A DNA stretch of 64,000 bases from Hydrolagus affinis (GCA_012026655.1 JAAILG010000047.1:1-64000), one strand, 5' to 3'. Shown: positions 11,690-32,821, counted from the first letter of the stretch. Numbers and translations: made by a program. Notes: generated by a model from the sequence alone, not told the origin.

Positions 11690-12660
11690 ACTCCCCAGTT
11701 TAGCCCCAAGTCAGTAAAGAACCCCAGGTTAAGAGAACATCCATTGAGTCCCCCCCCCCCCACCCCCTCAACAGTGCGGGCTCGAGTCCGAGTCAATCGC
11801 ACAAGCTTCCAGCGCCATGTGAGAAAACACTTGTTACGTCTCCTTTGCACTTCAGCAGGGAAATGAGCCACCCGAGAGGGGGTGGGGGGGAGGGAGGGAG
11901 AGGAGGGTAAGTGTGGAAACCACACTGCCAACTTAACGCAGAGCAGCCCGCAAACATGAACAATAATAATAATAACAAAAACAACAAGCCGCGAACACAC
12001 ACACACTCACGCACGCACATAGAGACAGGGGGAGTGTTGGCGGGGGGGGGGGAGGGAAGGATAGAAAGTTAGTACCTTTGCTGAAGGTGGGTGCAATACT
12101 CTCACACAGCCGAGATGAGCTGAGTCAGGCCCGCTTTATTGGGGCTGACAGTGTAAAGGTTCCTCCCCCCACCCCCGCCGCTGATAACGGCGGCCAGGAG
12201 TCAGTGAGGAGGAGGAGGAGACCGGATCCTTCAGCAGGTGACACACTCCCCGCGGCGCTGCCGCTCAACTGTACACATGACAACCTCCTAAGCCCCCACC
12301 CCGGGGGGAGCTCGCACTACATGACCTGTGGGGCCGGCCGGTGTGTGTGTGTGTGAGAGAGAGAGAGTGAGACCCCTCGGCTCAGATTAAACCACTCGGT
12401 GCCGTTGACACGTTAAACCCTTCCTTCCTCACCGGCTCCTTCACGGTTTGAAGTCCCGACTCCGGCGCTTTACCCTAACGCGGCCGCTGATTGGTTGCTG
12501 CGGTTGATCGGCAACAAGGAAGCGTCGCATTTATTGGTCAAGAGGTTGAGGGCGGGTGGGTGAGGAGGGGTGGGGGGGGAGAGAGAGAGGAGCGGACGCT
12601 GGAGCCGCAACGTGCATCAGCAGCACGTGACCCCGGGAGGGAAACTGTACCACTGTCTGT
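11690..12660 (-). promoter_or_regulatory. SSX2IP: CpG/GC-rich promoter and non-coding first exon(s) of SSX2IP
   Basis: Strongly CpG-rich island upstream of the first coding exon. Two CCAAT boxes on the minus strand (ATTGG at ~12490 and ~12533), GC-box-like GGGCGGG at ~12550, E-box CACGTG at 12624-12629. Candidate donors CCG|GTGAGG (exon end 12433) and AAG|GTACTA (exon end 12076); acceptor of the ATG exon at 9235. Confidence 0.7.
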
Positions 12661-12678
12661 AACACAGCAGCAACACCT

Positions 12679-12792
12679 GACACTGACCCACCCCACACAC
12701 AACCAGAGCCAGACACTGATACCCACACAACCACAGCCAGACACTGATACCCACACAACCACAGCCAGACTATATATATATATATATATAAT
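12679..12792. repeat. 28-bp tandem repeat (~3 units) followed by (TA)n
   Basis: Unit gacactgatacccacacaaccacagcca starts at 12712 and 12740, with a partial unit at 12768 and a degenerate one at ~12679; (TA)n at 12771-12792. Confidence 0.85.
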
Positions 12793-15560
12793 AGATACTT
12801 TCATATATAGTATATGAAAACACTATTTCGAATCATGCAATGCTGAATATAATAAATACAATAAATGTTAAATATAACAAACGGTAGATTGATTAAATAG
12901 CACTACTGCATAAGCTTTGGGTTTTTGTGAAATTTAAGCATTATTATTAAATTCTTGTTTTTTTTAAAAAAAATAGCCAAATATCAAAGCATCGGATAGA
13001 GAGCCCTGGATTTCAGCAGGGACCGGGGATTCTTGAGGAATGAAAATGCAAGAAGTTTAGGAAAGTATTATGGAGCACACAAGAATGTTGCTACCCTGCC
13101 AAAGTACTTGCGTGATTTAACCTTTAATATTGTATCGTTTCATTTGATTTCTTCGTTTGCGTTCTTTTATATGTCTCTCTCTTAACTCATACCATCTGGT
13201 TGAAAGTGTTCTTCGTTATGAATGGAGCAGGAGCTTACCCAAACTGCTTGCTGCAATTTGAAACAGCTCTACAATCATAAGGTTTATAACAACTGAGTAA
13301 TGTGGATAACCTCAGTCTCTGAGGGGCGGAAAAAAGCACTCTCAACCTGCAGTACTCAAGGGACAGAGGTTGAGAACTGGGATGCTATTTTGGAACATTA
13401 CATCACATGTTCCATCAACTAATGATTCTTGAACGAAGCCTTAGTTTTAAAAGCTAAATTCCAATGTCAGACAAACTGCAGTCACACAATACAGTACTTT
13501 ACTGTTAAATTCTAAATAATCCCATGCTAGTGTGAACTCAGTGTGTGTACATTCTTTTCCTTTGTGGTCTTACATATCATATTTGGTTCAATCAATGTGT
13601 TTTTGAACCAAATAGCAGATATTGAATAAAAATACTCATGTTCTACAAAGGTGGTAAAGGTTACAGCAAATGCAAGGATTTTTATTATTATACAGGGATA
13701 ACATATTCTTATTTTACCTTTTATTTTCATTAATCAAGTACCGGTAAGTATATTATGAGCCTGCTTGATTGAACATCTATCTCTAGTTTGCTTAGAAAGT
13801 CAATGAAAGTAACTAGTGTACATTGCATGAGTATAGTATTTTTAAAAGATCATTGTTATTGTTGTATTTTTTTATATCCCAACACCACATACCACACTGA
13901 TACCATTTCCAAGAGGGATGAATCAACCCACCTATGCTACCTGCAAAAGCACCATCAAACCCACTCCTGTAATTGTACAGATGAAATTGTTTCCTTTTGG
14001 GCCATATTTTGCTCAACGTCACTCATAGCAATGCTACGAAGATCAGCATTTGACTACCACGGTTTGGTGGAGATGTAGCAAAGCAAGTCGCAGAATTTTT
14101 CTTTATTGAGATAGTGGAAGAAATCACACAACACATCTTAAGCGTTTCTTTTATATTCTACATGTTTGTGGGTCATTGCTGTGCACAACTGACTGCCGCG
14201 TTCGTACAGAAAATGCACAGTCAATCCACTTAACAGTATATTAAGTCTCCATGACACGATAAGGCGTCTTATTAAATGCAAGGATTATTATGTTGCTAGG
14301 AAACTTCAACACACTATTATTAACAAAACTATTAGATTCTGGAATACAGTTGACATCTTCATGCTATAGAATTTAACAATAGCAGACCATGCAAGACAAT
14401 CAGACTGAATAATGCAACATTTACAAACACGCCATCTATGATTGATATAACAAATGTGTTCAGAGCATGCTCATTTTTAACATGTATTGTTAATGTGAAA
14501 ATTACTGTGTAACTAAACATTTATCGGCAGGCTCTGCCATTCATACCATTGAATCTAATTGAATCGCAAATATTTATTTCTTGCAATCCATGAACAGATT
14601 CAAACAGTTCATTTAAGCAACTTGCTCACTAACATACCAACAAGAGTTGGGTGATAATTGGTGAGGAGGGAGGAAAGGGTATTATTCAGTAAAAAAAATT
14701 AATTCTTGATAAAGTAAATTCTTCCTTTTTATTTGAAAGGTTGCTTGTAGTTTTGGATCCTTTTCCTAATATAACTATCAAATGAATGAAAGATAGTACT
14801 GTACATGAATTTTGCACCCTTCAACCTTATCATACATTGCAAATAAGTGCAAATTGATGTTGTTAGTGACCGAGTCCCATAGAAAAGATTCCTGCGATAT
14901 CAAACATTAAAAATTATAATTTGTGTTGCAATGTTTTTCAAAGCTAAATTTGAAATTGTAGGTAAATGTTCAAAATGACAATTAGTATCTGCTTGATACT
15001 AAGAATAATTAATCGGATTCAATTATAAAAAATGTCTTATCACTAATTTGCCACAACCATTTTTACAATCCCACTGCTCTTCTGCTGAGGGAAAGAAAAG
15101 TGGAGGGCCAAATTCCAGTGTAATCCCCATGCAATTAATTGGTTTGGTATAATTTTTCACAAAATATACCTTCTTTCTGAGAAACCGACACTGTGGTACA
15201 GTCCCTTCATTATTTCTTTAGGATGTTTTATTTGTGCCATTGGATTGAAGACTGGGTGACATGTTTTCCCCTCACTTTTTATTAGATAACTTTGATACTA
15301 GTATCGATACACAATTAAAATGTGGAATAAATCTGAATGTTTTGAAGAGGGATTTTAAAGTAAGCTGTACATACAATCTGTATTTTAAAATTTCTATTCT
15401 GATTTCTTTCATAAAGCTGGACACTAAACCATTGTACCATTGAAAAAAATTTGAATAGTAAAATACTTTAACAATGATAAATACGATTCAAATATATTTA
15501 AGTACCAATGGAAACCAAATCTGATCATATTCTATGTTCTTTACTGAGCATTTGATTGAT

Positions 15561-18500
15561 TCAAGGATTTAACAAGCCTGGTGCAGTCCAGAGTTGACTG
15601 TCTTCAGCTGGAAAAGACGCATTTTTAATTTCTTCCGTCTGTGGTTCATTGCATTCTTTCTCTTCAAGCCACCATGTAATCATTTCTCCTTTACCCTGAA
15701 AAAGAATACAGTGCCTGGTGACTTATGTTAAAATGTATTTGAAACATGAAACCTTAGTTAAGTTGGGTTAATGTTCTTGTGGCATTCTTGAGGTTATTCC
15801 CCCATTTTTACTCTCATGTTAGCATTCTTTCCCCTGTAAAGGGATGAGCTGTGGTATTCATGAAAAGGGATATTGTTTTATAGGGCCCCATTTCCTGGAG
15901 GCCTAACTGCTTTGTACTTTGCCAGTGCAAGCGGAGGCCAAATGTTTTTCTTTACTACTGGCTTCTCAGTTTGCGAATTGTTTACTTATGTCTTTCTGTG
16001 AAAGAGATGGGGTTCTGACTATAATTCAGGAGGACAACTGCTTCGCAAGCCTCTCTTAACAATCAAGAGAAAATGTCAATACTCTGCACAGAACCACATG
16101 AAAAGTATCTTTTCAGATAAAAATACATTGTATAAATAAATGCTTCAACTTGAGCTGATTGAAATATGTGGATGGAGCGTGGTTTGAGGTGGAGAGAGCA
16201 CTCAGACAAACTGCAGTCAGACAATATTACACAATAAAAATATAACGTAACGCAGATTGAAATAGATATAACATAATTGATAATAATCTTTGCAGATTTC
16301 AAAATACACACGTGGTACCCAGTTACCCAATAGTAACTGGGTACCATATGTGTACTTTGGAATAGTAAATGGTGAAATTAAACAGCATACATCCAGTTTT
16401 TAGACAGCTGAACCTTCTAGTCATTTGAAGTGATACCCATCTGTGTTCACTCTGAGTGCAGTATGTAGTTATAGTCCTCTGGGATAAACCTCTAAATGCA
16501 ACTTGCCAAATTACTGAAGCATTGATATGGTTTGCAAATTTGGCCCAAGAATTGGTTTCAACAGGATATTGTTGCTTTGAGGAGCTAGATAGAGAGAGAC
16601 AATTATCTATTTCTTATATAGAAGTCTCAGGAATTGTTTACACCTATGCCAAGTTGTTACTATTCCATGAACTTTGGAGGAGATTTTTAAAAAATTAAAT
16701 GTATCTCAATGCAAATGTTAAATTTTAACTTTAAAAAAAAGTAAACTACTTTTATGTAACTTTATTAGATAAAATTGTATATGTATGTCAAAATAAATGG
16801 GAGGGCAATTGTTGTTGTTATCACATCTTTGCGATGTCTCAAAACGCTTCACAGAATATCCTCCCTCTCACACACACCTATATACACACACACAAAACAC
16901 AGAAACTCTCCTGTAGGTACACACTTCTTATTACACACAGACACATAACTTTATCATTGTTTAATTTGTTTCAATATAAAGTGTTATCTAAAAAATATTT
17001 TCACATAGCGAGTTGTTCAGATCTGGAATGCATTGCCTGAAAGGGGGTGGTGGAACCTGATTTGATAATAACTTTTAAGAAAGAAGTAGATAATTATTTT
17101 GGGAGGACAAGTTTGCAGGGCTATGGGGAGAGAGCGGGGAGTAGGATTGATTTGGACAGCTCTTTTCAAAGGAAGGAACTGCCTTATCTCGGTATATTCA
17201 AAATAAACCAGGGTGTAAACATTCAGTGACAAAATGATGGCACTTTCCAATTGTGAAATAAAGATTAGTTTGATACAAATTCACTGCAAGTCATACCTTT
17301 ACATTAAGTGTCCCACGACAAGTGAGGATGTAACCACCAATTTCCTTGAGCAAATCAGAGGTACTGGAACTGCACTGTATTTTTAATGCTATAATGGGAG
17401 GGCATCACAGAAAAAGACAATTATATTAACTGATCTAACATTCACTAAAAATCACAATCTATGATTTTATACAAGCATTCTTAAATAATGCATTTACAAT
17501 TTCTAGGTTTGTCTTCTACCTGGCAACTGTAATTCATGGCCATTGTGGAAAATGAAGACACTAATATGCTGTGAAAATATATAGGCACACAACACATATG
17601 AATTTTTTTTTACTAACGGCTGAAGTAACCTTTGCTGCTATTTCCTTTGCTGTTGAATGACAATCTGATCTGTGTTTATTGAGTGAATAAATCACATATC
17701 TAGCCACTCCTCTGCACCGCCCCAACATTCTAACCTCCTCTCGCCTCACAAAAGTACCCTTTGCCTCCGCTCTACTGGGTCTGGCCTCCTCCTTGTTCCC
17801 CGAATCCTCCATTTCACCGTTGGTGGCCACTAAGCCCGAAGCTTTGGAACTCTATCCCCCACTCTCTTCGCCTCGCCCACTCCTTTCCCATTTTCAGGTC
17901 ACGCCTGAAAACTTTTCTGTTAAACCGCGCCTTTGGTCACCTTTTTCCCCCTCCCCCTGGTTCGGCCCTGGGCTCCGCTTTGTGATGTGCTCTGAGATGC
18001 TGTCGAGCGTGGAGGGAGCTATATAAACCTAGGTTGTTCTTGTTGTTATCGAAAGAACCATCAGAGAATCCTCTCCTGGTTAAGATTGCACTGGAGTTAT
18101 CAAATTCATCAACAAGAAACACAGATTATTGCTGATATTGCTGATATTGTTAGTTTAAAGAAGCTGTACATTCAATGCACGGCAAAAGCAAATTTTGCTT
18201 GTGCTTTGAAGTGTTTTGCTTTGGTGGATTACTTGTTAGCAATGTGACTATGGTACAGTACGTGCTGAGAGTTGGCCTATTTGGTTAGATGACAGAATCT
18301 CAGAAGATTAAGCCACTGCATTGAGAACATCACAACACTAATCTGACTGCAATTAACAGCCAGATAAAATCCTACCCACAGATTCCTGATCCCTCCTGTG
18401 CATTCTGAGGGATTTGTAGATTTTCCTAGGTTTAGAGGTTTGGTTAGAATAAAAAGTATTTCACACATTAGACTAATAAGCATGACTTTTGTATTCCCTG

Positions 18501-21500
18501 TTCCCCCCAAATTAAATTCACTGCAAGTAATATACTAGCAATCAAGAATACATCGGAGTTTTTCTACATAGTAATTGTTCAAAGGTTCAGCTTCATCTCA
18601 TGGCAAAATTGTGACTGGAGTGATAAGATACCACTAGATATGTGCTTTCAACTTTGTCTTTCAGTGAAGATAATTATTTGGTTAGGAATAGGCTGAATAT
18701 TCTAGACAGCGTGGCAAGATGATTAAATACTCCATGAAACACGATGGTTTCTGTGCAGCTGGGACTATAGTTATCTGTGGAGAGCAGCTGGCCAGGTCTG
18801 ACTGATGGAGATTTAACTCTAAATCAATACCGTATTATGGAATCTTACTGGACCACCTTTTCAGAGACGAAGAGGAAAAATATTGCAGTAATTTTCCTCG
18901 GCCGATTAATTATGTAGCATAGAATTCTTGCTAGAGTAGATTATAAATGGTATGCAAGAGGATGGACTGAAGTAACCGTTCCTAATTTCATAATTGTAAT
19001 TAGTGTATACAATCATTATAATAATTCCTTGCATTCAATATAGCGCCTTGTCACAATGTCGAGCGTCTCAAAGCACTTCACGTAATTCACTGTGACTTGT
19101 TGTTGCCGTGTATCTGTAGGCAAATTATATTGCTGTTGAGGATATGAAAGGTTTCTGACTGACTGATCAATTATGAAAACCCTGATATTCACAGAATTAA
19201 TTTCAATTCTTTCCCAGCATCAGCTGCTGCTTCTCTGAAGTGAACAGCATTTAGAGAAAAGATCCGTAGATCTGTATCAACAGAAATAAATAGCCCAGCA
19301 ATCTCCTCTTGTAAAACTCATCTATTGTCCAGGAGATAAAGAGATTCACAAAGCAGTTAACACTTGAATTGCCCCACACCAGCAGCAACTCCTAATTCTT
19401 TCATTATGTGAGAAAAACCAAGGCAACTGCTGGGTTTTCAAGTGGCAGATTGCAAAGGTCAAAACACCAAGTGTTTGCGTGAGCAGATAAGCAGCTTTAT
19501 ATGCTCAGGTGTGTGTTTTTACAATATGCTGTCCAAGGATTAATGTTATTAAAAAGGAATTAAAATACCCATAACCTAATGAGAATTTGTCCTTGTGCTG
19601 AAAGGATCTCTAATGGAAAACCCCCACTAAAAAAAACACCCACACTAATTAGTCACTTAAGTATTCTACCACCAGGTGTACAATTCATTCTTTAATGGGA
19701 AACCTAATTTAGCGACTGACCCAAATTTATTATAAATAACAATAATTAATTTGATATAGCACTTTTCATGTCTTCTCGAAGTCTCAAAGCCTTTCACAGA
19801 AGATACTGAAAAGTGAATTGACTGTATATTTGTGGGCGAAATGCGTTAACCAACTGCACACAGCAGTGTCCCACAAACAGTCACGGACCGAGTGACCAGA
19901 TTATTATTGTTTTTTTAAAGGATTAGTATTATTAAAGCGATCCTCCAATCGATCAATAACCGGGTTCCTACTCATTGCCAGGCAAACAGAGATGTGTGGA
20001 GTAAGGAAACCTGGCCAAGATTTTGCCCTGACGGGAATAGAACCCGGGTCTCTCGTCTGCAAAATACACTCTGTAAGGATCTAAAATCATAGTTAAGCCA
20101 GCAATTAATTCACTGACTCGTATACCTTCACTTGTTGACTCCATCCTCGATGCTGTGTTCACCGTGTCTCCAAACAAGCAGTATCGAGGCATTTTGGTTC
20201 CAACCACACCAGCCACTAAAGGACCTTTTATAGAATCAACGGAGGAAAACACAAAGCGTAAAACCTTTGATGAAAAATTTGGCCAGCCCGTTTAATTCGG
20301 CTGTCAAACTCTGCAGTCATCAGCCGCTGCAAAATTAAAATGATTACCTGAATGAATGCCTGCTCTGATTTTCAACTTGTTGTCTGGCTTGTGTGGAATC
20401 CTGAAGGAGCAGCAGACGTTTACTAAATCCAATGCCATACTTGCAATCTCACCTGCATGGTTTATACCATTTTCGTTAGGTACTCCGGAGACAACCATAT
20501 CTACACAGAGAAGTTGGAAACAAAAATAGAAACAGGTATCAATAAAACAGCAACCACTCTCAGTGCTTTATTTTGTCACTCGTGTGCCCTTTTCTAAGTT
20601 CCTCATTTGGTTGATCATTTTGTTCAGCCACAGCTGGAACAGACTAGATAAGAATACACAATGGCTTATCGGTAGCTGCATTTCAGGCAGTTTCAACCTT
20701 AAACTAGGTGATTGTGGGTTGAATAGGACCAAAACCATCCAAAATTTGGAACAAATCAGAACAAAAGTGTTGCAGAAAGGCCTTAAGGATATTTATGTGC
20801 TTATTGTGTGCTTATTCTGTCTACTGTACTACATATCAGTAAAATAATGTTCCCATCATATTTTAATGACTAAAACTAATGAACATTTTGTTATTTGTCT
20901 ACAACGGCGACCATTTATATTTTTGGTACTGAATACAACAACAAGGAACCCAAGGCTGAGTGTACTGTATCAAAGACATTTGCAGATCACTGGCAGTGAT
21001 TGTATAATGTTGTCCTGATGTTTTCGCTGTTCTCCTTACACTTTGCAATTATAATATGGTTTTCCCATAAATATTCATAAAGATTTAATTTTAATAAGCA
21101 CTAATATGAGCAATTATGATTTAATTTAAATAAAAAACTGTGGGCAGAACAATGCTGCAAGAAATACCACATCATTAATGGCTTCAAATAACTTGAATTC
21201 TTACATTTGTTACTGGATTCTTAATGAAGCAAAATGTAATATACATGAAACTGTCATCGGCAAATAGAAAAAGACAAGTGGTTTAGTGTAGATTAAACAC
21301 TTTATTGAGAGCTTGTCTTCATGCTTTTCAGCTGCGATTTATAATGCGAGTCTATTCCTCACAGAATGATGATCATTGTATTTTTTTTTTAAAAAACGCA
21401 CACAAATCCATCCTGGCTCAAATCGACGAGGCCAAAGGTTAGAACAAACATTAAACCACGTCTTGATTCACTCTAACAGTGGAGTACTGTTGCTGTAATT

Positions 21501-24500
21501 ATAATCTGTTCTTTGTCTATTGTCTATTTGTGCTGGCAAAATGGCTTGTTGTGTGAGATACACCGCTACCATAATATTTTTAAATTTACGATGAGTAGCA
21601 GCCATAGTCATAACAGGTAATATATATATTTGTTTAAATGACTGGATCAATGACTAAGTGAAGATACAGAAGTTAACTGGTGATGATTTTCCTTGGGAGT
21701 GAGGTGCAGAGCAGTGAGGGAGAAATTCATACGGGCTGATGTTTAGACAAAGATTGCCTTCCCTGTTTGGGAGGATGTTAATAATTTCATGATATTATTG
21801 AAAAACAGAAGAGAGTTTTCTCCCGGTGTCCTAGCCAACAATCATCCAATCAATTCACTTTTCAGTATATTCTACGAAGCACGTTGAGACGTCTTGAAGA
21901 CGACGTCTTGATAAGGCGCTATATCAAAAGCAAGAGTTATTATTACATATTATTATCCAAACAAAATTGGTGACTGTTTGTGGCAAATTGCTCCTAACAA
22001 ATTGTCTGTTGTATTTGCCTACAAATACAATACTCTTCACAGAAACTTTGTGAGGATGTTTGAGATGTTCGCGAGGTTATGAGTGCCAGATCAAATGCAA
22101 TCATTATAATTATTATTCTATAAAAAATGAATATTACTCTATTACGTAAGTATCATTCTTCAGAATCCATGTTCTTTTTGAAACAGGTATGCTATGTTAA
22201 TGTATACTTACATGCATCCCCTATTGTTTCAACTTTGTAGACATCATAGTTATCAATTATATCATCAAAGGTAGTGTACAGCTTATTCAGAAAATCCACT
22301 ACCTGGAAAGGAGTGCTGTCACTTGAAATCTGCGTAAATCCAACAATATCACTACAAAAAATGGAAAATCTTGATCAGTAAGGCAAATCTATTTTGATCA
22401 GCTGTAACAGCAATTCTCTCCTATTAACAAAAGTTTTCTATAGCAATGAGAATGAAGTAATTAGTAGATATGTAAGAATGCAAGAATATACAAAGCACAA
22501 AAGTTTGGAGGTATATAGTAATTCAAATTTAACTAATAATTTAAAGTAGTCTTGCATACTGCACAAAAACACAATTCATTATTATAACAACTTGGAAGAA
22601 AACACAAAACCAACAGTTATTATTGTGATTATTCCTACTGTAGTGAATGTATTGGTAATAAAACTTAAAAACTCAAATCAAAGATCTGTTCACCTAACAT
22701 TGTCAGATCTGAGTGAAACTCTGTGTGGCAAGAATTTGTGTTGAATAGAATGTGCAGAATAGCTCATGTAAAATTGAGGCCCGCCACAATAAACCAGAGA
22801 TTTTTTGTTAAAAACAAGAATAATTGGCAGAGATTCTTAATTGGGGCATTTCAGACTGAAAAGGTTTCATGTTTAACAGAGTCAGGAAAAAGAAATTCTT
22901 AAAATGGAACACAATTCTGACATTGATAGCACTGGCACTGACCCAACTGAGTCACGATTTGCATGGCTGCAGCTCAGAGATCAAGGCTGTTCAGATCTCA
23001 TCCCAAGATTATCCGTTGCAATCAAATGCAATAATAGATTGGTCTTGCTGGCCAAGGCAATTCTAAATCTACTCAATAACAGTTATATAGCACTCTCACC
23101 ATTACAACAATGAAATCAGATCACAATGTTTAAATGACATGCCTGAAATACACTGTAGCATTAGAATACGTTTGGGCTTCTGAAGTAGTTCCTTGGCGGA
23201 GATCGTCAGCTACTTGCTTTGGTAACATACCTGGTGATACAAGTAACAGAATAATAAATTCAAAAGAGCTGGTAATTTCTGCAATGCTATTCAGTTGAGG
23301 CTATTGGAGGCCTATTTCCAATGAAGATATCTTACTGTACAAAAGGCAATCTGTCTTTTGTTTTTCCAGGAGCAGATCTTGAGTTCTCTCAGCCACAATA
23401 CTTTCCAAATGTTTACTGTATTTTTCCATCTAGAAATAAACAGAGGACATGTGCTGGTACGTACATTCCTAAAGGTGGAGGGCATGCACCAAGGTTACAT
23501 GATTTTACAATGTCACTCTGGCTTGTCAGAAGTCTTGTTTTGCTTATTTTATTCAGAACGTTGGATAATTAATTTCAGTTGTTCACCAGCATGAAAGCTG
23601 TTGCAACGTATTTCTATGGCAATACTAGAATACACCCTGTAATTATATGCAAGATTTATTTATTATATTTGTATGTAAAAAACACAGAGATTGGATTGAA
23701 AGGAATATTTAAAGCGTTGTCCCTAATGACTAGTCAAGGTAACCTAGTTCTGTTGGGGGAACTTCAATTTTATTAGCTCTTAATCATTACTCATTACTTG
23801 AGTCTGCCAGAGATTTGCGTTTTTTTTTATTTTGGTGAATTTGTAGGCTGAAATTAAGGATTTTTTTTCACTTTCAAATCTCTCCGCCGCCTTGCCCCCA
23901 CCCTACTGTGTCACCTCCCACAACATCTCCACTCAACAAACACTGGTGGCTTACTTCATTGGTGAATGAACTTTCAGCTACTCTGCCTCTGCTATCTGTA
24001 CCTTGTCCCCATTTTAAGACAGCCTCCTGATATGAAGGGTGCTATGTAAATGTTTATTGCCATATTTCTGCCACAGGCAAGAACTTATGAACTAAGACTT
24101 TGCAAAAATGTTCTATACAGTATATTGATATAAAGCATAACTGCAGAGAAAGGCGACTTTCATCTCATTTACTGGAGCTTGGGTTCTTCCCGCTGGATTC
24201 CTGTTAATCCTACAACTCTGGAAGCCAAACCTACAGAGTTTATCAACAGGGCTAAGCTGCATGGGTGTAGAAGCCTGAAGTTGTAGTTTTTTTGAAAAAT
24301 AAATCTGTAATATGGCCTTGTGCACTAAGCTGTAATTTGCTACCAGAGAAATGGAGATGATATATAATTAAATATTGCACAGTCTTAAATTGTACCCTTG
24401 TCACAAGGTTCCAAATGAATGTGATTTATTTACAGTACTTAAAATGTTCAAAGTGCTATTTTGCAGAGAAACTTCCTTGGAAAACAAAATGTTGATGTAT

Positions 24501-27500
24501 CTCACAACAAAGCAGGAAACTGAGCAAATTTTGACCAAAATACACTTACCAGATTCATCATCATGTCAACTGGACTCACTTTGTTAGGGTTCATTCTCTC
24601 GAGCATCTTTTTGACGTGTTCAAATGATGGCCTCAGAGTAGGATTCTGTGCCCAGCACTTTGTCACCAACTAAAAATAGAAAAATCAATTTAAAAGTAGA
24701 CACCTAGATAAATCAACACCCATTACATTCTCCACTTAATTTATAATAATAATCCTTATCATTTTGACACAATGTAAAGCATTGCTAAGATACAATGAGA
24801 AGGTTTATTTTGGATAATCGATAACTGATGCAGTGTAACAATTCAATTTCTGTTCCCACAAACCTTACCTCTATATATTCCTCTTGATTTGGGCAGTCAG
24901 TGTCAGATTTTCTAGCTATAATTTCAGGGATTGGAGGCCGCCATGTCAATTCAAGCTTTTGAAGATCTATATTTTCCTGTAAAATAAATTTATACATATA
25001 TCATTTTTCAAACTTTTGAAATTTCAATCAAATGCTGGAAACTAGATAACATAATCCATCAAAAATTTTGTTTAGAATATATACATACAGGAACAGGGTA
25101 GCAACGTGTCGCAATTTCAACCAATATTATGGAGAAGCTGGAGAATGAAAAACATAGGTAATACATATAACTCATTCTGTTTATTTTAATTAGAAAATAT
25201 GGTTTGATAAAATCATTCAGAAAAAAAACATGAATTTAATCTGTTCATTTGTGTATATCAAGGAAAGTTTGCATTTGAACTTTTAAGCGCTCCGAGACGC
25301 CATCCAGTGTGAAAGGCACTATATAATTATAAGTTGTTGTTGTTGTTAATTCAATTACCTGTATATGTCTGCGGCTGGTGTCATGCTGGAACTGGTGCAT
25401 GAAATAACTTCTGGAGCACAGTAAACACGTCCAGGCTTTATATTGAATAGGTTGGTAAATTCCTCAGAATCTTCTGTTCTGTAGGTTGTTAAACCATAAT
25501 CTTTACAGAATAAAATGAACATCTTGTTAATAAGATCTCTTGTTCCTTGCAGGAGTCTGCAAAGCACTCTAATCTTTTTAAGGTTTATAAATATGAGATT
25601 ACCTGCAATTTTGCAAACCCATCTATCATCGATGACACAGTTTTTTGACTGTAACCGTCCATGATAAATTCTGTGCTGGTGAAGATATGCCATTCCTCGT
25701 GCTGTGTCAGTTGCAAAAGACAATCTAAACAAAACAAAACAGGAGAATGTTTCTCATTTTAAGCATATAATCTGCACTACTTTTAATAATGCTGTCTTAA
25801 TCTCTAACCTAAAAAGAGAACCAATTCCCTCTGCATCAGTGCAAATGTTTCCATTTCCCACAAAATACACTCTCTGAGACCCTGGTTCTCTCCGCGGAGT
25901 GAACTTGACGTCTCAGTGGCAGATTGTGTTGAGTTCTACACATTTACATCGTCAAACCACAGCTATTAAGAAGTAAATCATAACTTCCCAAATATATTCA
26001 CATCGGATTCTTATCGCTGGCACAGAATCAGTAATAATCATCGTTGAATAGTTTCAACAATGTTATCAAGTTATAAAGTGTGTAGGTCAGAAAGCTAAAG
26101 ACAAGGAAGAAACAATGTAGGAGACAACTTTGTGGTCACAAGTTCCATTTAGAAAAACTCAATAAAATGAAAGAAGTAATGCACATTGAACAAGTTGCGT
26201 TATACATTCTCGGAAGAGACTTTGTGTAATAAAGATCATTTTGTAAGTCTGATACTGAATATATAGAATCTGACGTTCAAGCCTTGTTTCAAGCATCATC
26301 CAATCTTTGCCATTTAATACAGAAGGGTAAATTGTGTCTTTATTATTTACCTGAAACCCCAGTTTAATGGTATGTCATCACTATAAAGAACATCAGTCAG
26401 ACTGCCTTTAGGACAGTACTCGGTAATTATGATAACATTGGGGATCTCAACACAACCACCAATAAACTTGCACAGATTTGGATGATCAAGTTCCCTGAAA
26501 AGATCAGAGAGAGAGAGATAGTTGCTGAACACATACCATCATGAACAGGATTAACCGACATCTACAATATTGGCCTAACATATTATTTATATTTTAAAGC
26601 ATGTTTTCATTGAATTTCATGTTAATTTTCTTGATAACACCAAAATAAAGGCAGTTGCTTAAAATAAACAACTTGGTTACATCATCAGGTTCTGGTACTG
26701 TATCTCTATCTCTTTCGATTTCTCTGCAGTAACTAAAATGGTGTTGTGTACCTTACTTGTTTAACCTCTTTCCGAACAGTTTTTGATAGAGCAAATGTTT
26801 TCTTTTGAATACATTTCACAGCCACTAACCGGCCATCACTGCGACAAAAAGGGAAAGAAATGATCAATAACAAAGCATGGAATGAGTCACAGTCATTCAG
26901 CCCATCAAGCTTGCTCCCTATTTAGTTCACGCAAAACAAACCTACAACAACAACCTGCAATTATATAGTGCCCTCCACCTGGGTAGTGTCTTAAAGCACT
27001 CAACACTGGCGGAGGGGAGGAGGGGCAGGGAGATGGCTGATGCACGATTGAAGAGAGGGGGCAAGGCATAGGGATTGAGGGAGAGTGTTCCAGAGTTTTG
27101 GGGCATAGTGGCTGAAAGAGCAACCTACGATGGTGGGGCGAAGGGTGTGAGAGACAAGCAGGAGGCTGGTGCTGGTCGAGCAGAGGCACCAGAGTTGTGG
27201 TTTGGGGAGTGAGCAGGTCGGAGAGGAAGCGAGGTGCTAGGGAGTGAGTGGATTTAAACACAGGTTCCTCATTGAGCCTAATTAAAGAACACCCAATCTA
27301 CATCAGCTCCTGGGATGGATTTTAGCATTGGTGGAAAAATGACCTGCATTCATACATAATACTGTAGTATGTGAAAACGGCGAGTTAACTTACTAAATGC
27401 CAGTCTGTATAAAGTGTTTGAGTGTTGATCCTGGAATATGCGCGTCTGTGGTTATATCAGTCACATGGCTTGCGTTCGAAATTCCGTTTGTTTGTACACT

Positions 27501-30500
27501 TTCGATGCTGCCAAATCCCATTTGAAATGTGCTTCCTGAAAATATTAATCACGCTGGCTTGACAAAATTTCTGAAAGCGTCCCACAGGTGGGTTCTGGAA
27601 AGTGAGCGCTTCTCTTCAGAATCTTTTGTGTAAAATTGGCGAAGTACTGTACCTGATTTAATTTCTTTCAAATTGATGATCCAGCTCTCATCCCAAAGCA
27701 TCTTTTGCTTCTGGTACTGCAACCACTAAAAACGTATACAAATAATGTAGAAGTAAACTGAAACTGGACAAAGAAAAGATTAGGAAAACAGTGGGAGGCA
27801 GGGTGGGTGGTATGTCTGTTGGAGTTACCATAGATCTCTGCCATTCATACCTGAACCTCCCATCGCGTTGTGGTATATTGAGAAATCACCATCCAGCAGA
27901 TGGGATTTCTTTCACATTTCTACTGTTGGTTGAGCTCATGGATATGATCTCAGGTATATTCTTAAAATGCTTAGGTACTATTTTAATAATAAAACATTTC
28001 CAATGCAGCTCATTTGAAAAAGTACTTTAGGATAATTTTGCACAATAAGATGCTAATCAAAGTGTTATTTATTACGTACCACCACAGTAAATATAAACCC
28101 ACTGCAGAACAGGGCAATTGGAAGGCCTATTGAAACTTTGATTGTTGTGGGCATGGGGCATGCCCCACAGTCAGCTGGACACGTATCACATCGTTCATCA
28201 CCATCACAAACTCCGTCATCGCAAACTAATAATACAGGTTAAGAAGGAAACATGATTCACCTTGTGCAAGTAATCATACATATATTCTAAAGACATGCTA
28301 ACAGTGCAAAGACATTTATTTTAAATACTGTACTTATTCTTCAATATTCAACGCATGCAAAATATGCATGTACTTGTTCTACTTGTTTATTATTTCAGAA
28401 ATAATAAAAACTAAGATGTTTACAAAAAGCCCAAAGTGACGAGCAATACCTTGTGCACTCAATACTGTTGTCTTTGCTTCCAAAGCAGCATGCATACGTC
28501 CTAGTTTAATGTGTGCAATTAATGAAGTCATCCCATCGAGGATTAAGACAACCTGGAAATTATTACACAAAGGAGTGATATTTATTGGTGTGCAAATGAA
28601 AAAAAAGCAAGCAATACTGAGATTAGATAGATCTAAATCAGTCAATTGTAAAATCATCTGTAATATTATTTGGCTCAAGAATGCATCCTATGAATAGCTA
28701 GCAACTTCTTAATCTGTGACTGTGCTCAACAAGATAATACATCCAATTTTAGTGTCAGATTAGAGCTCTTATAAAATTATAAAGGAAACTAAAATAGCAT
28801 GGAGTATTCATGGAGATCTTCAGAAACGGTAAGATTATGATTACCTCAGAAAGCTTAAATTGTCTTAATTTTGTTTAATATATACTCATTTATATATATT
28901 ATTAAACAGTAAAAACAGTGTAGCCTAGTTACCAGTGAATCAATCAAGCTTATCTTCTAAGGCTCAGGAAATTGTATTGGAATTGTATATGTAAGCTTGT
29001 TGAATATAATACTGTACAATGTATTCATATCCCAGCACTCAACTAGATAACCTTGTGGCATAGCAGTAAGACAAAAGAATAGGAAGACTTTAATCTAGTC
29101 CTGATCCCAGTAAACAACAACAATAACAAAATTACACTTATAGAGTGCCTTTCACGTCAGGAGGCGCTGAACAGTCAGGGGTTGGGACCTGAGCATGGGG
29201 GAGAGGGATAGTAGTGGGGAGGGGCACAGTAGAGGGGAGGGGAGGGAGAGAGGTGGGAGAGTGGCTGAAGTAACAATTGAAAAGAAGGGTCTTGAGATCA
29301 GCCTTGAAGGAGGCAAGGGAGAAAGCGAGGTGAAGGGACTGTGGGATGGACTTCCAGAGTGTGGGGGCAGAGAGACTGAAAGTGATGGTAGGGCAGGTCG
29401 GGCAGGAGACATGGAGCAGATTGGAGCCCACTGAATGGAGGGGGTGGGGCAGGTTGGTAGGGAGTCGGGGAATCAGGGAATCACGTTAAATAATAGGACA
29501 CAGAATAATCATGGACACTCATGAAATGCGGTTGCACAACCTGTTTGATGGAACGTACTCCCAACATACACATGTAATTTTGTTGTTGTTTACAAAATAA
29601 TTAATTTAAAGAACAACATTCTAATTCTTGGTCTATGTGCCATATGTATACACTAAATACAAATTTAAAGACATCACTGTGATAAAATACTGTATTTACT
29701 CAAATAGAAGGTGATTTTTTCATTAAAAGGCACCTCCAAAATCAAGGTGTGCCTTAGAATCAATTTCACCTTACAATTGAAGCAAAGTTCCTTCTATTTT
29801 CCACAAACTCCAGTTAAAGCTTTATAATCAGGCACACCTTAGATTTGAATAAATACAATAATGTTAGTTTTATCTTTTTGGTAACAAATGTAGATTCAAG
29901 TAAGTTAAATACATTTGTAACCATTGTACATCAACAGTAAATGATCAGACTGCCCATTAACAATACCTTAGTCGTCCAGTTTTGTTGGGACATCTTGCCA
30001 GCCTGTGGCGCTGTGTGAGTAACTATTTTTCCATCATCTGGAATCCAGGGACCACATATACCTCCTTCTTTCTGAAACAAACAATGTTTAAAAATCCTTG
30101 GAACGCTGCCTTAAATATTGTCCATTGATGGACTTTAAAGATCCCATCACACGATTTGTAAAACAACGTGGAGTTTTTTTTTCTATAATCCAAGCCAATA
30201 ATTCTCCAGGTAAAATCCTTCCGACTTGCAATCTGCTGTTTCGAAAACATTTGTGAAATTTGAAATTGAGACCTTGGAATAGCTAAAAAATGTAAATTAA
30301 ACTTTCATATAAGACAAATGATAAAGTATGAGTAGCATCATTTAATTCAATATTTTGTGGACCATTCAACACATAACTAAATTTCAAAAGTACTGTACAC
30401 ACCATAAATGCCATGGGGCAGGAATGAACGTTGGCATGGTAAATGCAGCAGTTATTTTCAGATGCATCTTTCCAGTTTGCTGGGCACTCCTTTTCATCAC

Positions 30501-32746
30501 AGAACCATTTTGCTTCACTTGCATTGCTACATATCAAAAATAAGATTGGATGTTTAACTGGAAGAGCAGTTATCAGATTCATAGTCAACCTTTTTGCATT
30601 TCTAGACATGTGCATTGAAACAACTATGATGTGCCAAAATTTGGCCCAATTGACTGTTAGGTAAGAAATGCTTTCGCAGTGTGACAGCGCCATTTCCTTT
30701 CAGGAAACAAACCTTTTCGTATCTATTGAGGATACTTGGCGATAATAGCAAAGAGACAATACCGTAATTTCAGATCAATTCCCACCTGAACTTCAGAATT
30801 CCCTGTGTGACTGCCATCTCGTAAAATCCATGGGAAACAATAACACTATAGGTAATATTGAACTCCTCACCACTCCGCACTTTCTCTGGGGGTCTGTCCA
30901 CCCAGCTCATTTCCAGACCTTAAAGAAAGGAAGCCACAATCGTAGCAACAATCAAAAACGATCAGAATTTGTAAATAAATGGAGAAGCTAGATGCAAAAA
31001 CATAATTTTACAACTAAATAAATCCTAAGAAATTCTTAACCAGCCATCTGATGATTCCAACAATTTGGTTCCGGTTGTCTTTGCATTTTCCCTTGACACC
31101 AAATTATCAATCAAGACAATTTTTTACGGCAGTAATTTTGCACAAAAGACAGGGGGGAAGGGAATAAATCTGGAGGCAAGTACGTTGAGAAAAATGCGTT
31201 GAGAAGTCAGTTTGTCTTATTATTTTTTTTACACACACCACACACACCAGTTACTGAAATGCAATCCTGAATATATGATGCAACTGAATATAATCAGGTT
31301 TGACACACCTCACTTGATTGATGTTTTTAGTGAGTTCATATTCAATCTTACCCCCACAGTCGATCATGTTGTGTTCATCTGGTTCCTTGATGGGCCAACA
31401 ATCGTAATCACTGTTATCCAAATCATGCCAACACTCTGTAACCTTCATAGAAAGATTAATCCCAAAGTCAGTGAATTAAAGTTACTGATCCTACAAGTAT
31501 GATAGGAAAGGCAACATCATCGCTGTAACTTTGTTTACATGTGAAAGAGACAGGTATTTCTACATAACTCCTAACCAGAGGTAATTACAGTTTTAGCAAA
31601 GTAAAAATAATCCTTGCATTTGTTATAGCGCTTTTAATAATAATTCTTGCATTTGATATACAGTAGCGCTTTTCAAATCTTCTAGACATCTCAAAGTGCT
31701 TCACAGAATATACTGTAAAGTGAAATTACTGTATATAAGTGAGTGAAACACGGGAGCCAATTACACATAGCAGTTTCCCACAAACAGTCATGGATTGAAA
31801 TGACCAATTTTTTTTTGAGGAATTGTTATTCGGCTTGTAGAGTAAGAACACTTGCCCAAGGTTTTGTCCTGCCTGGAATTGAACCCAGGTCTCTTTATTC
31901 TAAGTCAAATGCTCTAACCACTGAGCTACAGGACTCCATTCCAACAAGTAAAAGCATTTATATTGGGACCACGACTGCTTGTGGGACACTGCTGTGTGCA
32001 ATTGGCTGCCGCGTTTCATCCACAAATATACAATCAATTCTGTGAAGTGTTTGAGGCGTCTAGAAGACGTGAAAAATGCTACATCAAATGCAAGTATTAT
32101 TATTTTCATACCTGGGATTGAAACAAAATGATCATGATTTGAACATTATTATTATTATTTAAAAAAAATCTAAATCCACAATACACCCAATTCCAAAATA
32201 ACAAAACAGGAGAGGGGTGGAGGGGTGGGGGAGATATATTTAACGAATATATCGTTATGCAGCTGGTCGTTTCATTCAAATGAATGACAATAGTTTTTAG
32301 TCTATAAAAGAAAAATGAACTTGAAAATATTTATTGACAGCATCAAGTTCCCGGCTTGGAATTTATTGATTTTCAACTTGAATAGGTGCCAGAAAGAAGA
32401 TTTCTAATCTTTAAATCTTGGGAAATTTGAAAAGAGAAATATGAAAAGAAATGTAAAGGGCTTTAAAACAAGACTCCTGCATTTCTTATTCTAGTAAATG
32501 TGTAACTATTACCTTAAAGAAGTTAAAATATAGTCTTCAAGCCATTTACAATAAGGAATTAAATTAAACATAGAATGCAGACATCATTGCACATACTGAT
32601 CTCAGGATGGCGCAGTACTTTTGCAATATGTTCTCTGGTAATAAAGTATTGGTATTTATAAGCATATAAACAACATTAAAATCCATACTTACAAGAAAGA
32701 GAAAGGATAAGGTTAGTAAAACAGCGCTAAACTTGTTGCTTTCCAT
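15561..32746 (-). CDS. Orphan receptor-type (membrane) guanylyl cyclase with a short Cys-rich ectodomain; 23 coding exons, 847 aa
   Basis: Exons (minus strand): 32746-32693, 31442-31352, 30918-30786, 30526-30403, 30071-29967, 28552-28450, 28225-28080, 27725-27653, 27535-27394, 26838-26752, 26494-26351, 25724-25603, 25500-25359, 25137-25089, 24976-24869, 24669-24550, 23429-23336, 23230-23143, 22351-22212, 20500-20348, 20224-20126, 17388-17297, 15695-15561. They total 2544 nt, all phases are compatible and there is no internal stop. Signal peptide [22 protein letters not shown]; [23 protein letters not shown]; kinase-homology motifs [32 protein letters not shown]; hinge [16 protein letters not shown]; cyclase motifs [40 protein letters not shown]. 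Confidence 0.95.
16995..17180 (+). mobile_element. CR1 LINE 3' fragment
   Basis: tattttcacatagcgagttgttcagatctggaatgcattgcctga...acttttaagaaagaagtaga corresponds to the CR1 ORF2 C-terminus (F..RVV.IWNALP...FKKE.D); a related copy is at ~45305-45500. Confidence 0.7.
17700..18048 (+). mobile_element. L2-type LINE 3' fragment
   Basis: ORF2-end peptide [28 protein letters not shown] followed by a ggagctatataaa..(gtt)n tail. Confidence 0.75.
19735..20060 (-). mobile_element. tRNA-derived SINE, near full length
   Basis: Same body as the other copies, with a degenerate head (gggaatagaacccgggtctctcg) at ~20030-20060. Confidence 0.7.
26940..27262 (-). mobile_element. L2-type LINE 3' fragment
   Basis: (caa)n tail, tatagtgccctcc, and the purine-rich antisense of the L2 ORF2 end ([16 protein letters not shown]). 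Confidence 0.7.
29113..29470 (-). mobile_element. L2-type LINE 3' fragment
   Basis: Minus-strand ORF reads [31 protein letters not shown]; the tail is tatagagtgcctttcacgtcaggag with (caa)n. Confidence 0.75.
29690..29858. mobile_element. Tc2/pogo (Kanga/MER104-like) MITE
   Basis: Imperfect TIRs CTGTATTTACTCAAATAGAAGGTG ... CACCTTAGATTTGAATAAATACAA, flanked by TA at both ends. Confidence 0.6.
31635..31937 (-). mobile_element. Full-length tRNA-headed SINE
   Basis: Head on the minus strand GGAGTCCTGTAGCTCAGTGGTTAGAGCA (A box) ... GGTTCAATTCC (B box), then body and (TTA)n tail. Confidence 0.8.
31969..32104 (+). mobile_element. 5'-truncated SINE, inverted relative to the neighbouring copy
   Basis: ccacgactgcttgtgggacactgctgtgtgcaattggctgccgcg...caaatgcaagtattattatt. 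Confidence 0.75.
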
Positions 32747-32821
32747 AATCGGTGGTGGTTCAATTGTTTGCTTGTTAGCTGTTGCTCTGATCTGTCTGTG
32801 TCAGGTCTATCAGGGACACTG

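What the first reader, a model, noticed from the sequence alone, without database searches (positions are those of the whole stretch)
15561..32746. Intact orphan receptor guanylyl cyclase between SSX2IP and LPAR3: a candidate uncharacterised cGMP signalling system
Seen: 23 exons join in phase into an uninterrupted 847-aa protein with signal peptide, ~210-aa ectodomain, one TM, kinase-homology domain, coiled-coil hinge and cyclase domain. The catalytic set is complete: metal-binding Asp in FSDIVG and IGDAY, guanine-selecting Glu (KVETIG) and Cys (RYCLFG), and Asn/Arg in VNTASR. Established: mammalian receptor GCs (NPR1, NPR2, GUCY2C/D/E/F/G) have ectodomains of about 410-450 aa with a periplasmic-binding-protein fold, and I recall SSX2IP and LPAR3 being direct neighbours in human. 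Inference: this is a separate receptor-GC lineage lost in mammals, with an unknown ligand. The closest described protein I recall is medaka OlGC8, an orphan GC with a half-length ectodomain; orthology is not verified. Automated annotation would probably label it 'ANP receptor-like'.
Basis: partly seen in the sequence, partly recalled or inferred. Interest (0 to 1): 0.9.

Follow-up and report, generated by a model that had tools for sequence, protein, structure and literature searches.

The report
Chimaera copy of orphan guanylyl cyclase OlGC8
This is an intact gene for a membrane enzyme that makes the messenger cGMP and has an unusual short outer domain; it is the cartilaginous-fish copy of a gene already cloned in medaka, present from molluscs to platypus, whose activating signal is still unknown.

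Summary
On the minus strand, 32746-15561, 23 exons add up to 2544 nt (847 codons plus stop). All 22 acceptors are AG. 21 donors are GT and one is GC. Per-exon Pfam finds kinase-homology and cyclase domains and no ANF_receptor.

The gene is not a new system. Its relatives (best 120 of 1827 hits) are 635-978-aa cyclases without ANF_receptor, mostly auto-named 'ANP receptor 1-like'. They come from teleosts, sturgeon, gar, bichir, shark, amphibians, turtle, crocodile, birds and platypus. The medaka cluster includes 'membrane guanylyl cyclase8 precursor', i.e. OlGC8. Echidna has it too, so it is not lost in all mammals. Starfish and molluscs carry the same ectodomain.

A tree of the intracellular part separates this family from 23 canonical cyclases with 100/100 support. 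The ectodomain of the sturgeon orthologue folds confidently (pLDDT 86) as a beta-sandwich plus a six-Cys knot. It has no specific PDB match and is not a periplasmic-binding fold.

LPAR3 is 92% identical to Callorhinchus, so the host is a chimaera. RNA support is only about 1x of strand-consistent reads with no junction. I found no ligand in print.

The parts
32693..32746 (-). exon 1: ATG and hydrophobic signal-peptide-like N-terminus (18 codons)
   Evidence: Donor gtaagt. No homologue alignment covers it; it is assigned from the ATG, its hydrophobicity and the phase-0 donor.
31352..31442 (-). exon 2: ectodomain (WHDLDN...DCWP...DCG)
   Evidence: sturgeon P0234 aa 11-49, 59% identity.
30786..30918 (-). 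exon 3: ectodomain beta strands
   Evidence: P0234 aa 49-90, 64% identity.
30403..30526 (-). exon 4: ectodomain Cys/His-rich segment ([17 protein letters not shown])
29967..30071 (-). exon 5: ectodomain ([10 protein letters not shown]...THT...NWT)
   Evidence: 68% identity to P0234.
28450..28552 (-). exon 6: ectodomain last beta hairpin (SLIAHIKLG...ALEAK)
28080..28225 (-). exon 7: juxtamembrane six-Cys knot and transmembrane helix
   Evidence: P0004 aa 44-93, 68% identity. All six Cys that are invariant in 80 sequences are kept. AF2 of the orthologue gives a helix at 230-262.
27653..27725 (-). exon 8: cytoplasmic juxtamembrane ([14 protein letters not shown])
27394..27535 (-). exon 9: Ser/Thr-rich juxtamembrane segment, start of the kinase-homology domain
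26752..26838 (-). exon 10: kinase-homology domain (VAVK lysine)
26351..26494 (-). exon 11: kinase-homology domain
   Evidence: Pfam PK_Tyr_Ser-Thr 7.6e-08.
25603..25724 (-). exon 12: kinase-homology domain, HGRLQSKN in place of HRDLKxxN
   Evidence: Pfam 2.2e-09.
25359..25500 (-). exon 13: kinase-homology domain (DYG)
25089..25137 (-). exon 14: kinase-homology domain
   Evidence: P0004 aa 319-330, 92% identity.
24869..24976 (-). exon 15: kinase-homology domain
24550..24669 (-). exon 16: end of the kinase-homology domain, start of the linker
   Evidence: weak PK_Tyr_Ser-Thr, E 0.047.
23336..23429 (-). exon 17: coiled-coil / signalling helix
   Evidence: P0004 aa 413-444, 91% identity. Orthologues hit Pfam HNOBA here.
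23143..23230 (-). exon 18: end of the helix and first strand of the cyclase domain; followed by the only GC-AG intron
22212..22351 (-). exon 19: cyclase domain ([13 protein letters not shown])
   Evidence: Pfam Guanylate_cyc 9.3e-17.
20348..20500 (-). exon 20: cyclase domain
   Evidence: Pfam 1.1e-07. About 1x RNA reads of the fitting strand.
20126..20224 (-). exon 21: cyclase domain ([16 protein letters not shown])
   Evidence: Pfam 4.2e-14.
17297..17388 (-). exon 22: cyclase domain C-terminal part
   Evidence: P0037 aa 516-547, 75% identity.
15561..15695 (-). exon 23: [11 protein letters not shown]-terminal tail and stop TGA
   Evidence: AATAAA on the minus strand at 15283-15278 and 15232-15227. 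The two differences in the DNA run X1 (15579, 15585) fall on third codon positions and are synonymous (codons worked out by hand).

Best explanation
The window holds the chimaera (holocephalan) orthologue of the OlGC8-type receptor guanylyl cyclase. This is an old bilaterian branch of membrane cyclases. In it the usual ANF_receptor ectodomain is replaced by a beta-sandwich of about 180 aa with eight conserved Cys and four conserved His, followed by a six-Cys juxtamembrane knot. Shown here: the 23-exon reading frame is intact; it carries one TM segment, a pseudokinase domain (HGR in place of HRD), the linker helix, and a class III cyclase domain with both metal-binding Asp, the Glu and Cys that select guanine, and the Asn/Arg pair; the ectodomain is homologous to that of fish, tetrapod, starfish and mollusc proteins. 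Inferred from what is established for GC-A and GC-C: the protein works as a homodimer in the plasma membrane. A cue acting on the ectodomain is passed through the TM helices and the ATP-binding pseudokinase domain to the coiled coil. The coiled coil aligns the two cyclase domains so that they convert GTP to cGMP. The cue is unknown. The strong conservation of the ectodomain argues that it binds something specific.
For: Gene model: (23 exons, 847 codons, no stop). Domains per exon. Colinear tblastn with full-length homologues: (for example sturgeon P0234, 17 HSPs covering aa 11-847). Per-exon identity to gnathostome family members is 64-68% overall, 54-67% in the ectodomain and 80-84% in helix plus cyclase. 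It is 54% to the starfish member and 34% to a canonical crinoid GC. 13 of 14 invariant and 82 of 92 nearly invariant ectodomain/TM positions are kept; one more, G49, is the exon 2/3 split codon GGT. All best 120 hits carry kinase plus cyclase Pfam domains and none carries PF01094. OlGC8 sits in the medaka cluster. Tree of 561 intracellular columns: 17 short-ectodomain proteins against 23 canonical GCs, 100/100; the vertebrate members form one group, 100/99; the starfish member is next to the vertebrates and the three mollusc members group together. AF2 of the sturgeon ectodomain plus TM gives pLDDT 86.1 and pTM 0.70. The best PDB fold matches are generic Ig-like sandwiches (Foldseek E>=1.5e-3; VIA Z<=8.0). 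The PDB sequence search matches only residues 249-816, to NPR1 (494 bits) and GC-C (332 bits). Pfam finds nothing in the ectodomain of 4 of 4 orthologues.
Against: Expression in this species is barely supported. Three single-cell poly(A) RNA runs gave about 1x depth in some exon bins, and also in some intron bins and downstream bins. No exon junction was among the listed joints (15 shown, 199 not shown). One intron needs a non-canonical GC donor. Exon 1 has no homology support. The window's own protein was not placed in the tree, because that needs the joined model, which I left out. Enzyme activity and ligand are untested.
Confidence: 0.88

Rival explanations
1. It is a truncated offshoot of the natriuretic-peptide receptors (NPR1/NPR2) that lost most of its ligand-binding domain, as the database names suggest.
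For: The closest solved structure by sequence is human NPR1 (494 bits over residues 249-816 of the sturgeon orthologue, against 332 bits for GC-C). Source names are 'ANP receptor 1/2(-like)'.
Against: The ectodomain is not a remnant of ANF_receptor. There is no Pfam hit. The predicted fold is a beta-sandwich, not a periplasmic-binding fold. The same ectodomain occurs in starfish and molluscs. The family splits from 23 canonical GCs of placozoans, cnidarians, molluscs, hemichordates, echinoderms, an insect, a tardigrade, a nematode and a frog with 100/100 support on a branch of 0.83.
Confidence: 0.05
2. The gene is a decaying or silent relic in this species.
For: Only about 1x RNA reads and no junction. 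One GC donor. One invariant Gly of the Cys knot is Asp here (G206D). The protein is 5-10 points more diverged from other gnathostomes than they are from each other.
Against: No stop or frameshift in 23 exons. All catalytic residues are present. 13 of 14 invariant ectodomain/TM positions are kept. Neighbouring LPAR3 shows a similar degree of divergence (75% to shark, 63-69% to bony vertebrates), so the distance reflects the lineage and not decay. The two exon-23 differences seen in a second DNA sample are synonymous. The RNA runs are single-cell libraries of one sample of unknown tissue.
Confidence: 0.05
3. The ectodomain binds no ligand. The cyclase is controlled from inside the cell, as retinal GCs are by GCAPs, or by ions or pH or bicarbonate, and the ectodomain serves only folding, dimerisation or anchoring.
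For: No ligand is known. The fold is a generic sandwich. Some receptor GCs are regulated intracellularly (established knowledge, recalled).
Against: The ectodomain is conserved about as well as the kinase-homology domain. For the window the figures are 66-67% against 59% to sturgeon and shark. Fourteen positions are invariant and 92 nearly invariant over 80 sequences spanning vertebrates, starfish and molluscs. That fits a specific binding surface better. It does not exclude a small or ionic cue.
Confidence: 0.15

Closest known systems
Medaka OlGC8 ('membrane guanylyl cyclase8 precursor', NP_001098176.1 / BAC10588.1; cluster of P0167, 859 aa)
   Same: Same architecture and length class. The ectodomain is homologous (61% identity per exon), helix plus cyclase 83%, 66% overall. 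Pfam content is the same, without ANF_receptor. Both group with the same clade of vertebrate short-ectodomain GCs (in which the window itself is not a row).
   Different: Different lineage (holocephalan against teleost). What has been published about OlGC8 expression or ligand could not be read. Yamagami & Suzuki 2005 (Zoolog Sci 22:819) was seen only as an entry in another paper's reference list and is not held. That OlGC8 is an orphan is recalled, not checked.
Human NPR1 / GC-A (PDB 9bcv, 9dzh, 9bcl)
   Same: Best solved relative of the intracellular part: juxtamembrane region, pseudokinase, coiled coil and cyclase align end to end. Presumably the same dimeric activation mechanism.
   Different: NPR1 has an ANF_receptor ectodomain of about 440 aa that binds ANP and BNP. 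Nothing in residues 1-248 of the orthologue matches it, and the predicted fold differs.
Short-ectodomain GCs of starfish and molluscs (Asterias XP_071799685, Gigantopelta XP_041357474, Dreissena XP_052256190, Littorina XP_070194827, Mactra KAL4236675)
   Same: Same ectodomain with the same Cys pattern and six-Cys knot. Colinear with the window exon by exon. Same side of the 100/100 split for four of them; the Mactra protein was not a row of the tree.
   Different: 24-41% ectodomain identity to the window in the three measured. All are only automatic predictions named 'ANP receptor 1-like' or 'speract receptor-like'. No function is known to me.

Membership tests
Receptor (membrane) guanylyl cyclases | Type I topology: N-terminal signal peptide and one transmembrane helix | tested here: met
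   Hydrophobic exon 1. Exon 7 has a hydrophobic run followed by YQKQK. AF2 of the sturgeon orthologue gives a helix at 230-262. No signal-peptide predictor was available, so the signal peptide is read by eye.
Receptor (membrane) guanylyl cyclases | Kinase-homology (pseudokinase) domain between TM and cyclase | tested here: met
   Pfam PK_Tyr_Ser-Thr on exon ORFs at 7.6e-08 and 2.2e-09. HGRLQSKN replaces HRDLKxxN. It aligns with the NPR1 KHD in the orthologue.
Receptor (membrane) guanylyl cyclases | Coiled-coil / signalling helix before the cyclase domain | tested here: met
   Exon 17 is 91% identical to P0004 aa 413-444. The same stretch of 4 of 4 orthologues hits Pfam HNOBA. The exon ORFs alone gave no Pfam hit.
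Receptor (membrane) guanylyl cyclases | Class III cyclase domain with two metal-binding Asp, guanine-selecting Glu and Cys, and the Asn/Arg pair | tested here: met
   Pfam Guanylate_cyc on three exon ORFs. The motifs are read. The roles of the residues are established knowledge, recalled.
Receptor (membrane) guanylyl cyclases | Makes cGMP from GTP | not testable with these tools
   Needs expression and an enzyme assay.
ANF_receptor-type receptor GCs (NPR1, NPR2, GUCY2C-G) | Ectodomain of about 400-450 aa with the periplasmic-binding-protein (ANF_receptor, PF01094) fold | tested here: not met
   No PF01094 in 20 exon ORFs or in 4 orthologues. None of the 120 relatives carries it. tblastn with 32 canonical GCs finds no ectodomain match in the 64-kb window. 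The predicted fold is a beta-sandwich.
OlGC8-type short-ectodomain receptor GCs | Homologous ectodomain of about 210 aa with eight Cys, conserved His, and the CGDGxC...CPxDCGxC knot | tested here: met
   Exons 2-7 are 54-67% identical to gnathostome members and 40-41% to the starfish and Gigantopelta members. 13 of 14 invariant and 82 of 92 nearly invariant positions are kept.
OlGC8-type short-ectodomain receptor GCs | Intracellular domains fall in the family clade | tested here: inconclusive
   The family clade itself is 100/100. The window was not a row, because that needs the joined model, which I left out. Per-exon identity is 64-68% to members, 34% to a canonical crinoid GC and 54% to the starfish member, which points the same way.
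OlGC8-type short-ectodomain receptor GCs | Same chromosomal neighbourhood (SSX2IP - GC - LPAR3) in other species | not testable with these tools

The most novel reading that the evidence does not exclude
The ectodomain is an unclassified sensor module: a beta-sandwich with conserved His, Cys and Trp plus a six-Cys stalk, with no Pfam family and no specific PDB relative. It would detect a non-peptide cue such as a metal ion, pH or a small molecule, or an as yet unknown peptide. That would define a bilaterian cGMP pathway that therian mammals gave up and that nobody has deorphanised.
Probability: 0.25. Interest if true: 0.7.

Novelty: new member of a known kind. Interest (0 to 1): 0.33.

Why it matters
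As a sequence finding this is ordinary. It is one more orthologue of a gene cloned in medaka about twenty years ago and predicted in more than a hundred genomes. Its value is as a reminder of a gap. A receptor cyclase with a well-conserved ectodomain of unclassified family runs from molluscs to monotremes. It is mislabelled 'ANP receptor-like' throughout the databases and, as far as my searches reach, has no known ligand or physiology. The chimaera copy adds an early-branching jawed vertebrate. It shows the gene sitting between LPAR3 and SSX2IP there, which gives a fixed place to look for relics in therian genomes.

Tried and rejected
Missed upstream exons encoding the other half of an ANF_receptor domain: rejected. 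tblastn with 177 proteins, including 32 canonical GCs, gave nothing significant outside 15400-32800. LPAR3's last coding exon lies only 5 kb upstream.

A candidate penultimate exon at about 19100 (my first guess): rejected. Homologues place it at 17388-17297.

Host identity: a cyclostome or fast-evolving host, or a 2R paralogue, was considered because the protein is equidistant (64-68%) from all gnathostome orthologues. Rejected in favour of a holocephalan host. LPAR3 is 92% identical to Callorhinchus and shows the same pattern of distances.

Long proteins from the representative search as canonical-GC references: the ten I had named turned out to be unrelated multi-kinase proteins of fungi, plants and protists, or unnamed.

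The last homologue search returned 33 canonical GCs but no vertebrate NPR1 or NPR2.

ESM Atlas search for non-cyclase proteins with this ectodomain: no usable hit.

Literature: 'OlGC8' 0 papers. 'OlGC' anywhere gave only unrelated acronyms in the 20 listed of 202. Three broader searches gave nothing relevant (listings only, 0 papers). (listing only) led to three papers, of which I read passages only: PMC1435932, PMC6787079 and PMC6170504. None mentions this gene. The supplementary trees of PMC6787079 and PMC6170504 could not be seen and might include it.

RNA junction confirmation: inconclusive.

Full report
WHAT IS THERE. Stop-to-stop frames of the minus strand between 33500 and 15000 show kinase-like and cyclase-like peptides. 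I refined exon ends from AG/GT lists, guided by local tblastn of database homologues against the window. The resulting model has 23 exons from the ATG at 32746 to the TGA at 15563-15561. It is 2544 nt long, which is 847 codons plus stop.

All 22 acceptors are AG. 21 donors are GT. The donor of intron 18 (after 23143) is GC, and no GT donor there preserves the frame and the FSDIVGF motif. Fourteen junctions split a codon and none yields a stop; eight are phase 0. Phase was checked by arithmetic and split codons. All searches used single exon ORFs or database orthologues.

DOMAINS. Exon ORFs hit Pfam PK_Tyr_Ser-Thr twice and Guanylate_cyc three times. None of the 20 ORFs scanned hit ANF_receptor at E<=1. 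The exon peptides show:
- a hydrophobic N-terminus;
- one TM stretch followed by YQKQK;
- HGRLQSKN where kinases have HRDLKxxN, so a pseudokinase as in GC-A;
- the linker helix;
- the full cyclase catalytic set ([30 protein letters not shown]).

The roles of these residues are established knowledge that I recall and did not test. No further homologous exon lies elsewhere in the window: 11 of 2592 HSPs from 177 queries fell outside 15400-32800, and all had E>=0.15.

SURROUNDINGS AND HOST. All neighbouring genes are on the minus strand.
- Upstream lie two LPAR3 coding exons (50323-49547 and 38048-37659). The first is 92% identical to Callorhinchus milii LPAR3, 75% to the shark Heptranchias, 66-69% to three further sharks and 62% to the ray Narcine, and 60-68% to bony vertebrates. 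The genome is therefore a chimaera's, though not Callorhinchus itself.
- Further upstream is a mucolipin-like C-terminus (63787-63446; PKD_channel and Ion_trans, weak).
- Downstream are ADIP-domain exons of an SSX2IP-type gene (6496-4008 and others).

RELATIVES. A HMMER scan of 1.84 billion representatives used the one open frame that spans exons 12-13 (collected). It gave 556 hits. Local tblastn showed that several full-length hits are colinear with the window from exon 2 to exon 21 or 22, ectodomain included. Their sources name them as follows:
- 'ANP receptor 1-like' of the starfish Asterias amurensis and A. rubens and the gastropods Gigantopelta and Littorina;
- 'speract receptor-like' of the mussel Dreissena;
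- a hypothetical protein of the clam Mactra;
- fragments from the teleosts Coryphaenoides and Nothobranchius and the sturgeon Acipenser.

A word-based search with the Nothobranchius protein found 1827 proteins. The best 120 are 598-978 aa (all but four between 741 and 978). All carry kinase and cyclase Pfam domains and none carries PF01094. They come from many teleosts, sturgeon, gar, bowfin, bichir, the shark Heptranchias, two frogs, a caecilian, a turtle, a crocodile, many birds and the platypus.

The 90% cluster of the medaka protein contains 'membrane guanylyl cyclase8 precursor' (NP_001098176.1, BAC10588.1, BAD00160.1). The platypus cluster contains an echidna protein. 'Lost in mammals' must be narrowed to, at most, therians. 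No therian was among the 120, which is suggestive but not a test.

HOW CLOSE IS THE WINDOW'S GENE. Each exon peptide was aligned separately to chosen proteins.

| Compared with | Overall identity | Detail |
|---|---|---|
| Gnathostome family members | 64-68% | ectodomain 54-67%; juxtamembrane plus KHD 54-59%; helix plus cyclase 80-84% |
| Starfish member | 54% | |
| Gigantopelta and Dreissena members | 42-48% | |
| Canonical crinoid GC | 34% | ectodomain 15% |

Gnathostome members are 73-78% identical to each other. The extra distance of the window matches the distance seen for LPAR3 and fits a holocephalan.

Of the ectodomain/TM positions invariant in an 80-sequence alignment, 13 of 14 are kept; G206 is Asp here. 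Of the nearly invariant ones, 82 of 92 are kept. Nine carry mostly conservative changes, and one (G49) is the split codon GGT.

IS IT A SEPARATE LINEAGE. The tree used IQ-TREE with LG+C20 PMSF and the careful search. It covers 561 intracellular columns, the columns of residues 262-816 of the sturgeon protein, with the ectodomain excluded. There were 40 rows: 12 vertebrate and 5 invertebrate short-ectodomain proteins, and 23 canonical GCs that carry ANF_receptor. The canonical set comprises five echinoderms, six hemichordate proteins, Trichoplax, four cnidarians, three bivalves, a weevil, a tardigrade, a nematode and a frog 'guanylate cyclase 2G-like'.

The tree puts the 17 short-ectodomain proteins on one side of a branch of length 0.83 with 100/100 support. 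Inside, the vertebrates form one group (100/99), the starfish member is their neighbour (95/80) and the three mollusc members group together (97/93). The topology follows the species tree, so the family predates the protostome-deuterostome split.

Two limits apply. Rows were chosen by me from what the tools returned. No bona fide vertebrate NPR1, NPR2 or GUCY2C-F could be obtained: the last homologue search returned 33 canonical GCs, only one from a vertebrate. By sequence, the nearest solved structure of the intracellular part is human NPR1 (494 bits over residues 249-816 of the sturgeon orthologue), then GC-C (332 bits). Nothing matches residues 1-248. That explains the automatic names.

THE ECTODOMAIN. 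No Pfam family covers it in 4 of 4 orthologues. An ESM Atlas search that left out cyclase and kinase clusters gave no usable hit. AlphaFold2 on residues 1-263 of the sturgeon orthologue, with 80 aligned sequences, gave mean pLDDT 86.1 and pTM 0.70. The model has nine strands, three short helices, a coil-rich Cys-knot segment (about 201-229) and a long TM helix (230-262).

Foldseek against the PDB found nothing at E<=0.001. The best rows (1.5e-3 and weaker) are SoxYZ, complement C3 MG domains, PmoD, NPC2 and LPMOs. VIA-align against 48,161 chains gave a top Z of 8.0 (bacterial alpha-2-macroglobulin, SoxZ) with a flat list below it. The tool's own note says that pattern means only a common arrangement. 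The ectodomain is therefore an Ig-like or MG-like beta-sandwich with Cys/His-rich insertions. It is not a periplasmic-binding fold.

Some of the weak hits are copper-binding sandwiches. Four His (H123, H127, H153 and H183 in sturgeon numbering) are nearly invariant and kept in the window. A metal site is a speculation, not a finding.

EXPRESSION. The run search found one holder of the DNA (X1, contigs) and offered three single-cell poly(A) RNA runs of another coded organism and study. I laid all four on 14560-20540 (exons 20-23 and 1 kb downstream), chosen because such libraries favour 3' ends.
- X1 covers exons and introns alike at about 55x. It has 36 other letters and 14 gaps in one 2.3-kb contig piece, so it is genomic DNA of another individual or close species.
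- The RNA runs are dominated by three SINE-like repeats.
- In unique sequence they give about 0.1-1.5x depth, always with the first mate on the + strand, as most stranded libraries give for a minus-strand RNA. This depth occurs in the bins holding exons 20-21 and exon 23, in bins downstream of the stop, and in a few intron bins.
- No exon junction is among the 15 joints shown; 199 are not shown.

This is compatible with weak transcription of the gene but does not confirm splicing. In medaka the existence of NP_ and BA-prefixed records suggests that cloned cDNAs exist. That is an inference from accession types, not something I read.

LITERATURE. 'OlGC8' occurs in no held paper. Yamagami & Suzuki 2005 (Zoolog Sci 22:819-835) was seen only as an entry in the reference list of PMC1964805 and is not held. 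I read passages only of PMC1435932, PMC6787079 and PMC6170504; none mentions this gene. The other searches gave nothing relevant. So 'no known ligand' rests on these searches and on recall. Subscription journals and supplements were out of reach.

VERDICT. The gene is a real, apparently functional receptor guanylyl cyclase of the OlGC8 type. It is a new member of a known kind. Interest is modest for the sequence itself and higher only as a pointer to an undeorphanised receptor family.

Noticed in passing
window 23142-23141 (donor of intron 18, minus strand): This is the only non-canonical splice site of the gene: a GC-AG intron (exon ...TTCAG|gcatgt). It needs RNA confirmation. I could not check whether it is shared with other species.
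   Followed up: partly
window 25602-25501 (intron 12): The intron is 102 nt long, in frame and without a stop. The frame is open from 25753 to 25358. Retaining it would insert 34 residues into the kinase-homology domain without breaking the protein.
   Followed up: no
window 16760-17160, 17760-18160, 19560-20160: These intronic interspersed repeats have tRNA-like and Deu-like motifs. They reach word depths of 10^4 to 5.7 million in the DNA run and hundreds to more than a thousand reads in the poly(A) RNA runs on both strands. They swamp any read-based analysis of this locus.
   Followed up: no
window 49547-50323 and 37659-38048 (minus strand): The two LPAR3 coding exons are separated by an intron of about 11.5 kb. 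Exon 1 is 92% identical to Callorhinchus milii LPAR3, which identifies the host as a chimaera.
   Followed up: yes
window 11300-13400: A G+C-richer stretch (0.39-0.44, against about 0.36 around it) holds low-complexity open frames on both strands. It lies just upstream of the SSX2IP-type exons and about 2-4 kb downstream of the cyclase stop. It may be the SSX2IP promoter region.
   Followed up: no
window 63446-63787 (minus strand): An open frame with weak PKD_channel and Ion_trans hits looks like the C-terminal exon of a mucolipin gene. That fits the MCOLN-LPAR3-SSX2IP order I recall from human 1p22.
   Followed up: partly
window 56983-57082: A run of 100 N.
   Followed up: no
window 14560-15560: Sparse RNA reads of the same strand continue up to 1 kb beyond the stop codon. 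Either the 3' UTR is longer than the first AATAAA signals (15283, 15232) suggest, or there is read-through.
   Followed up: no
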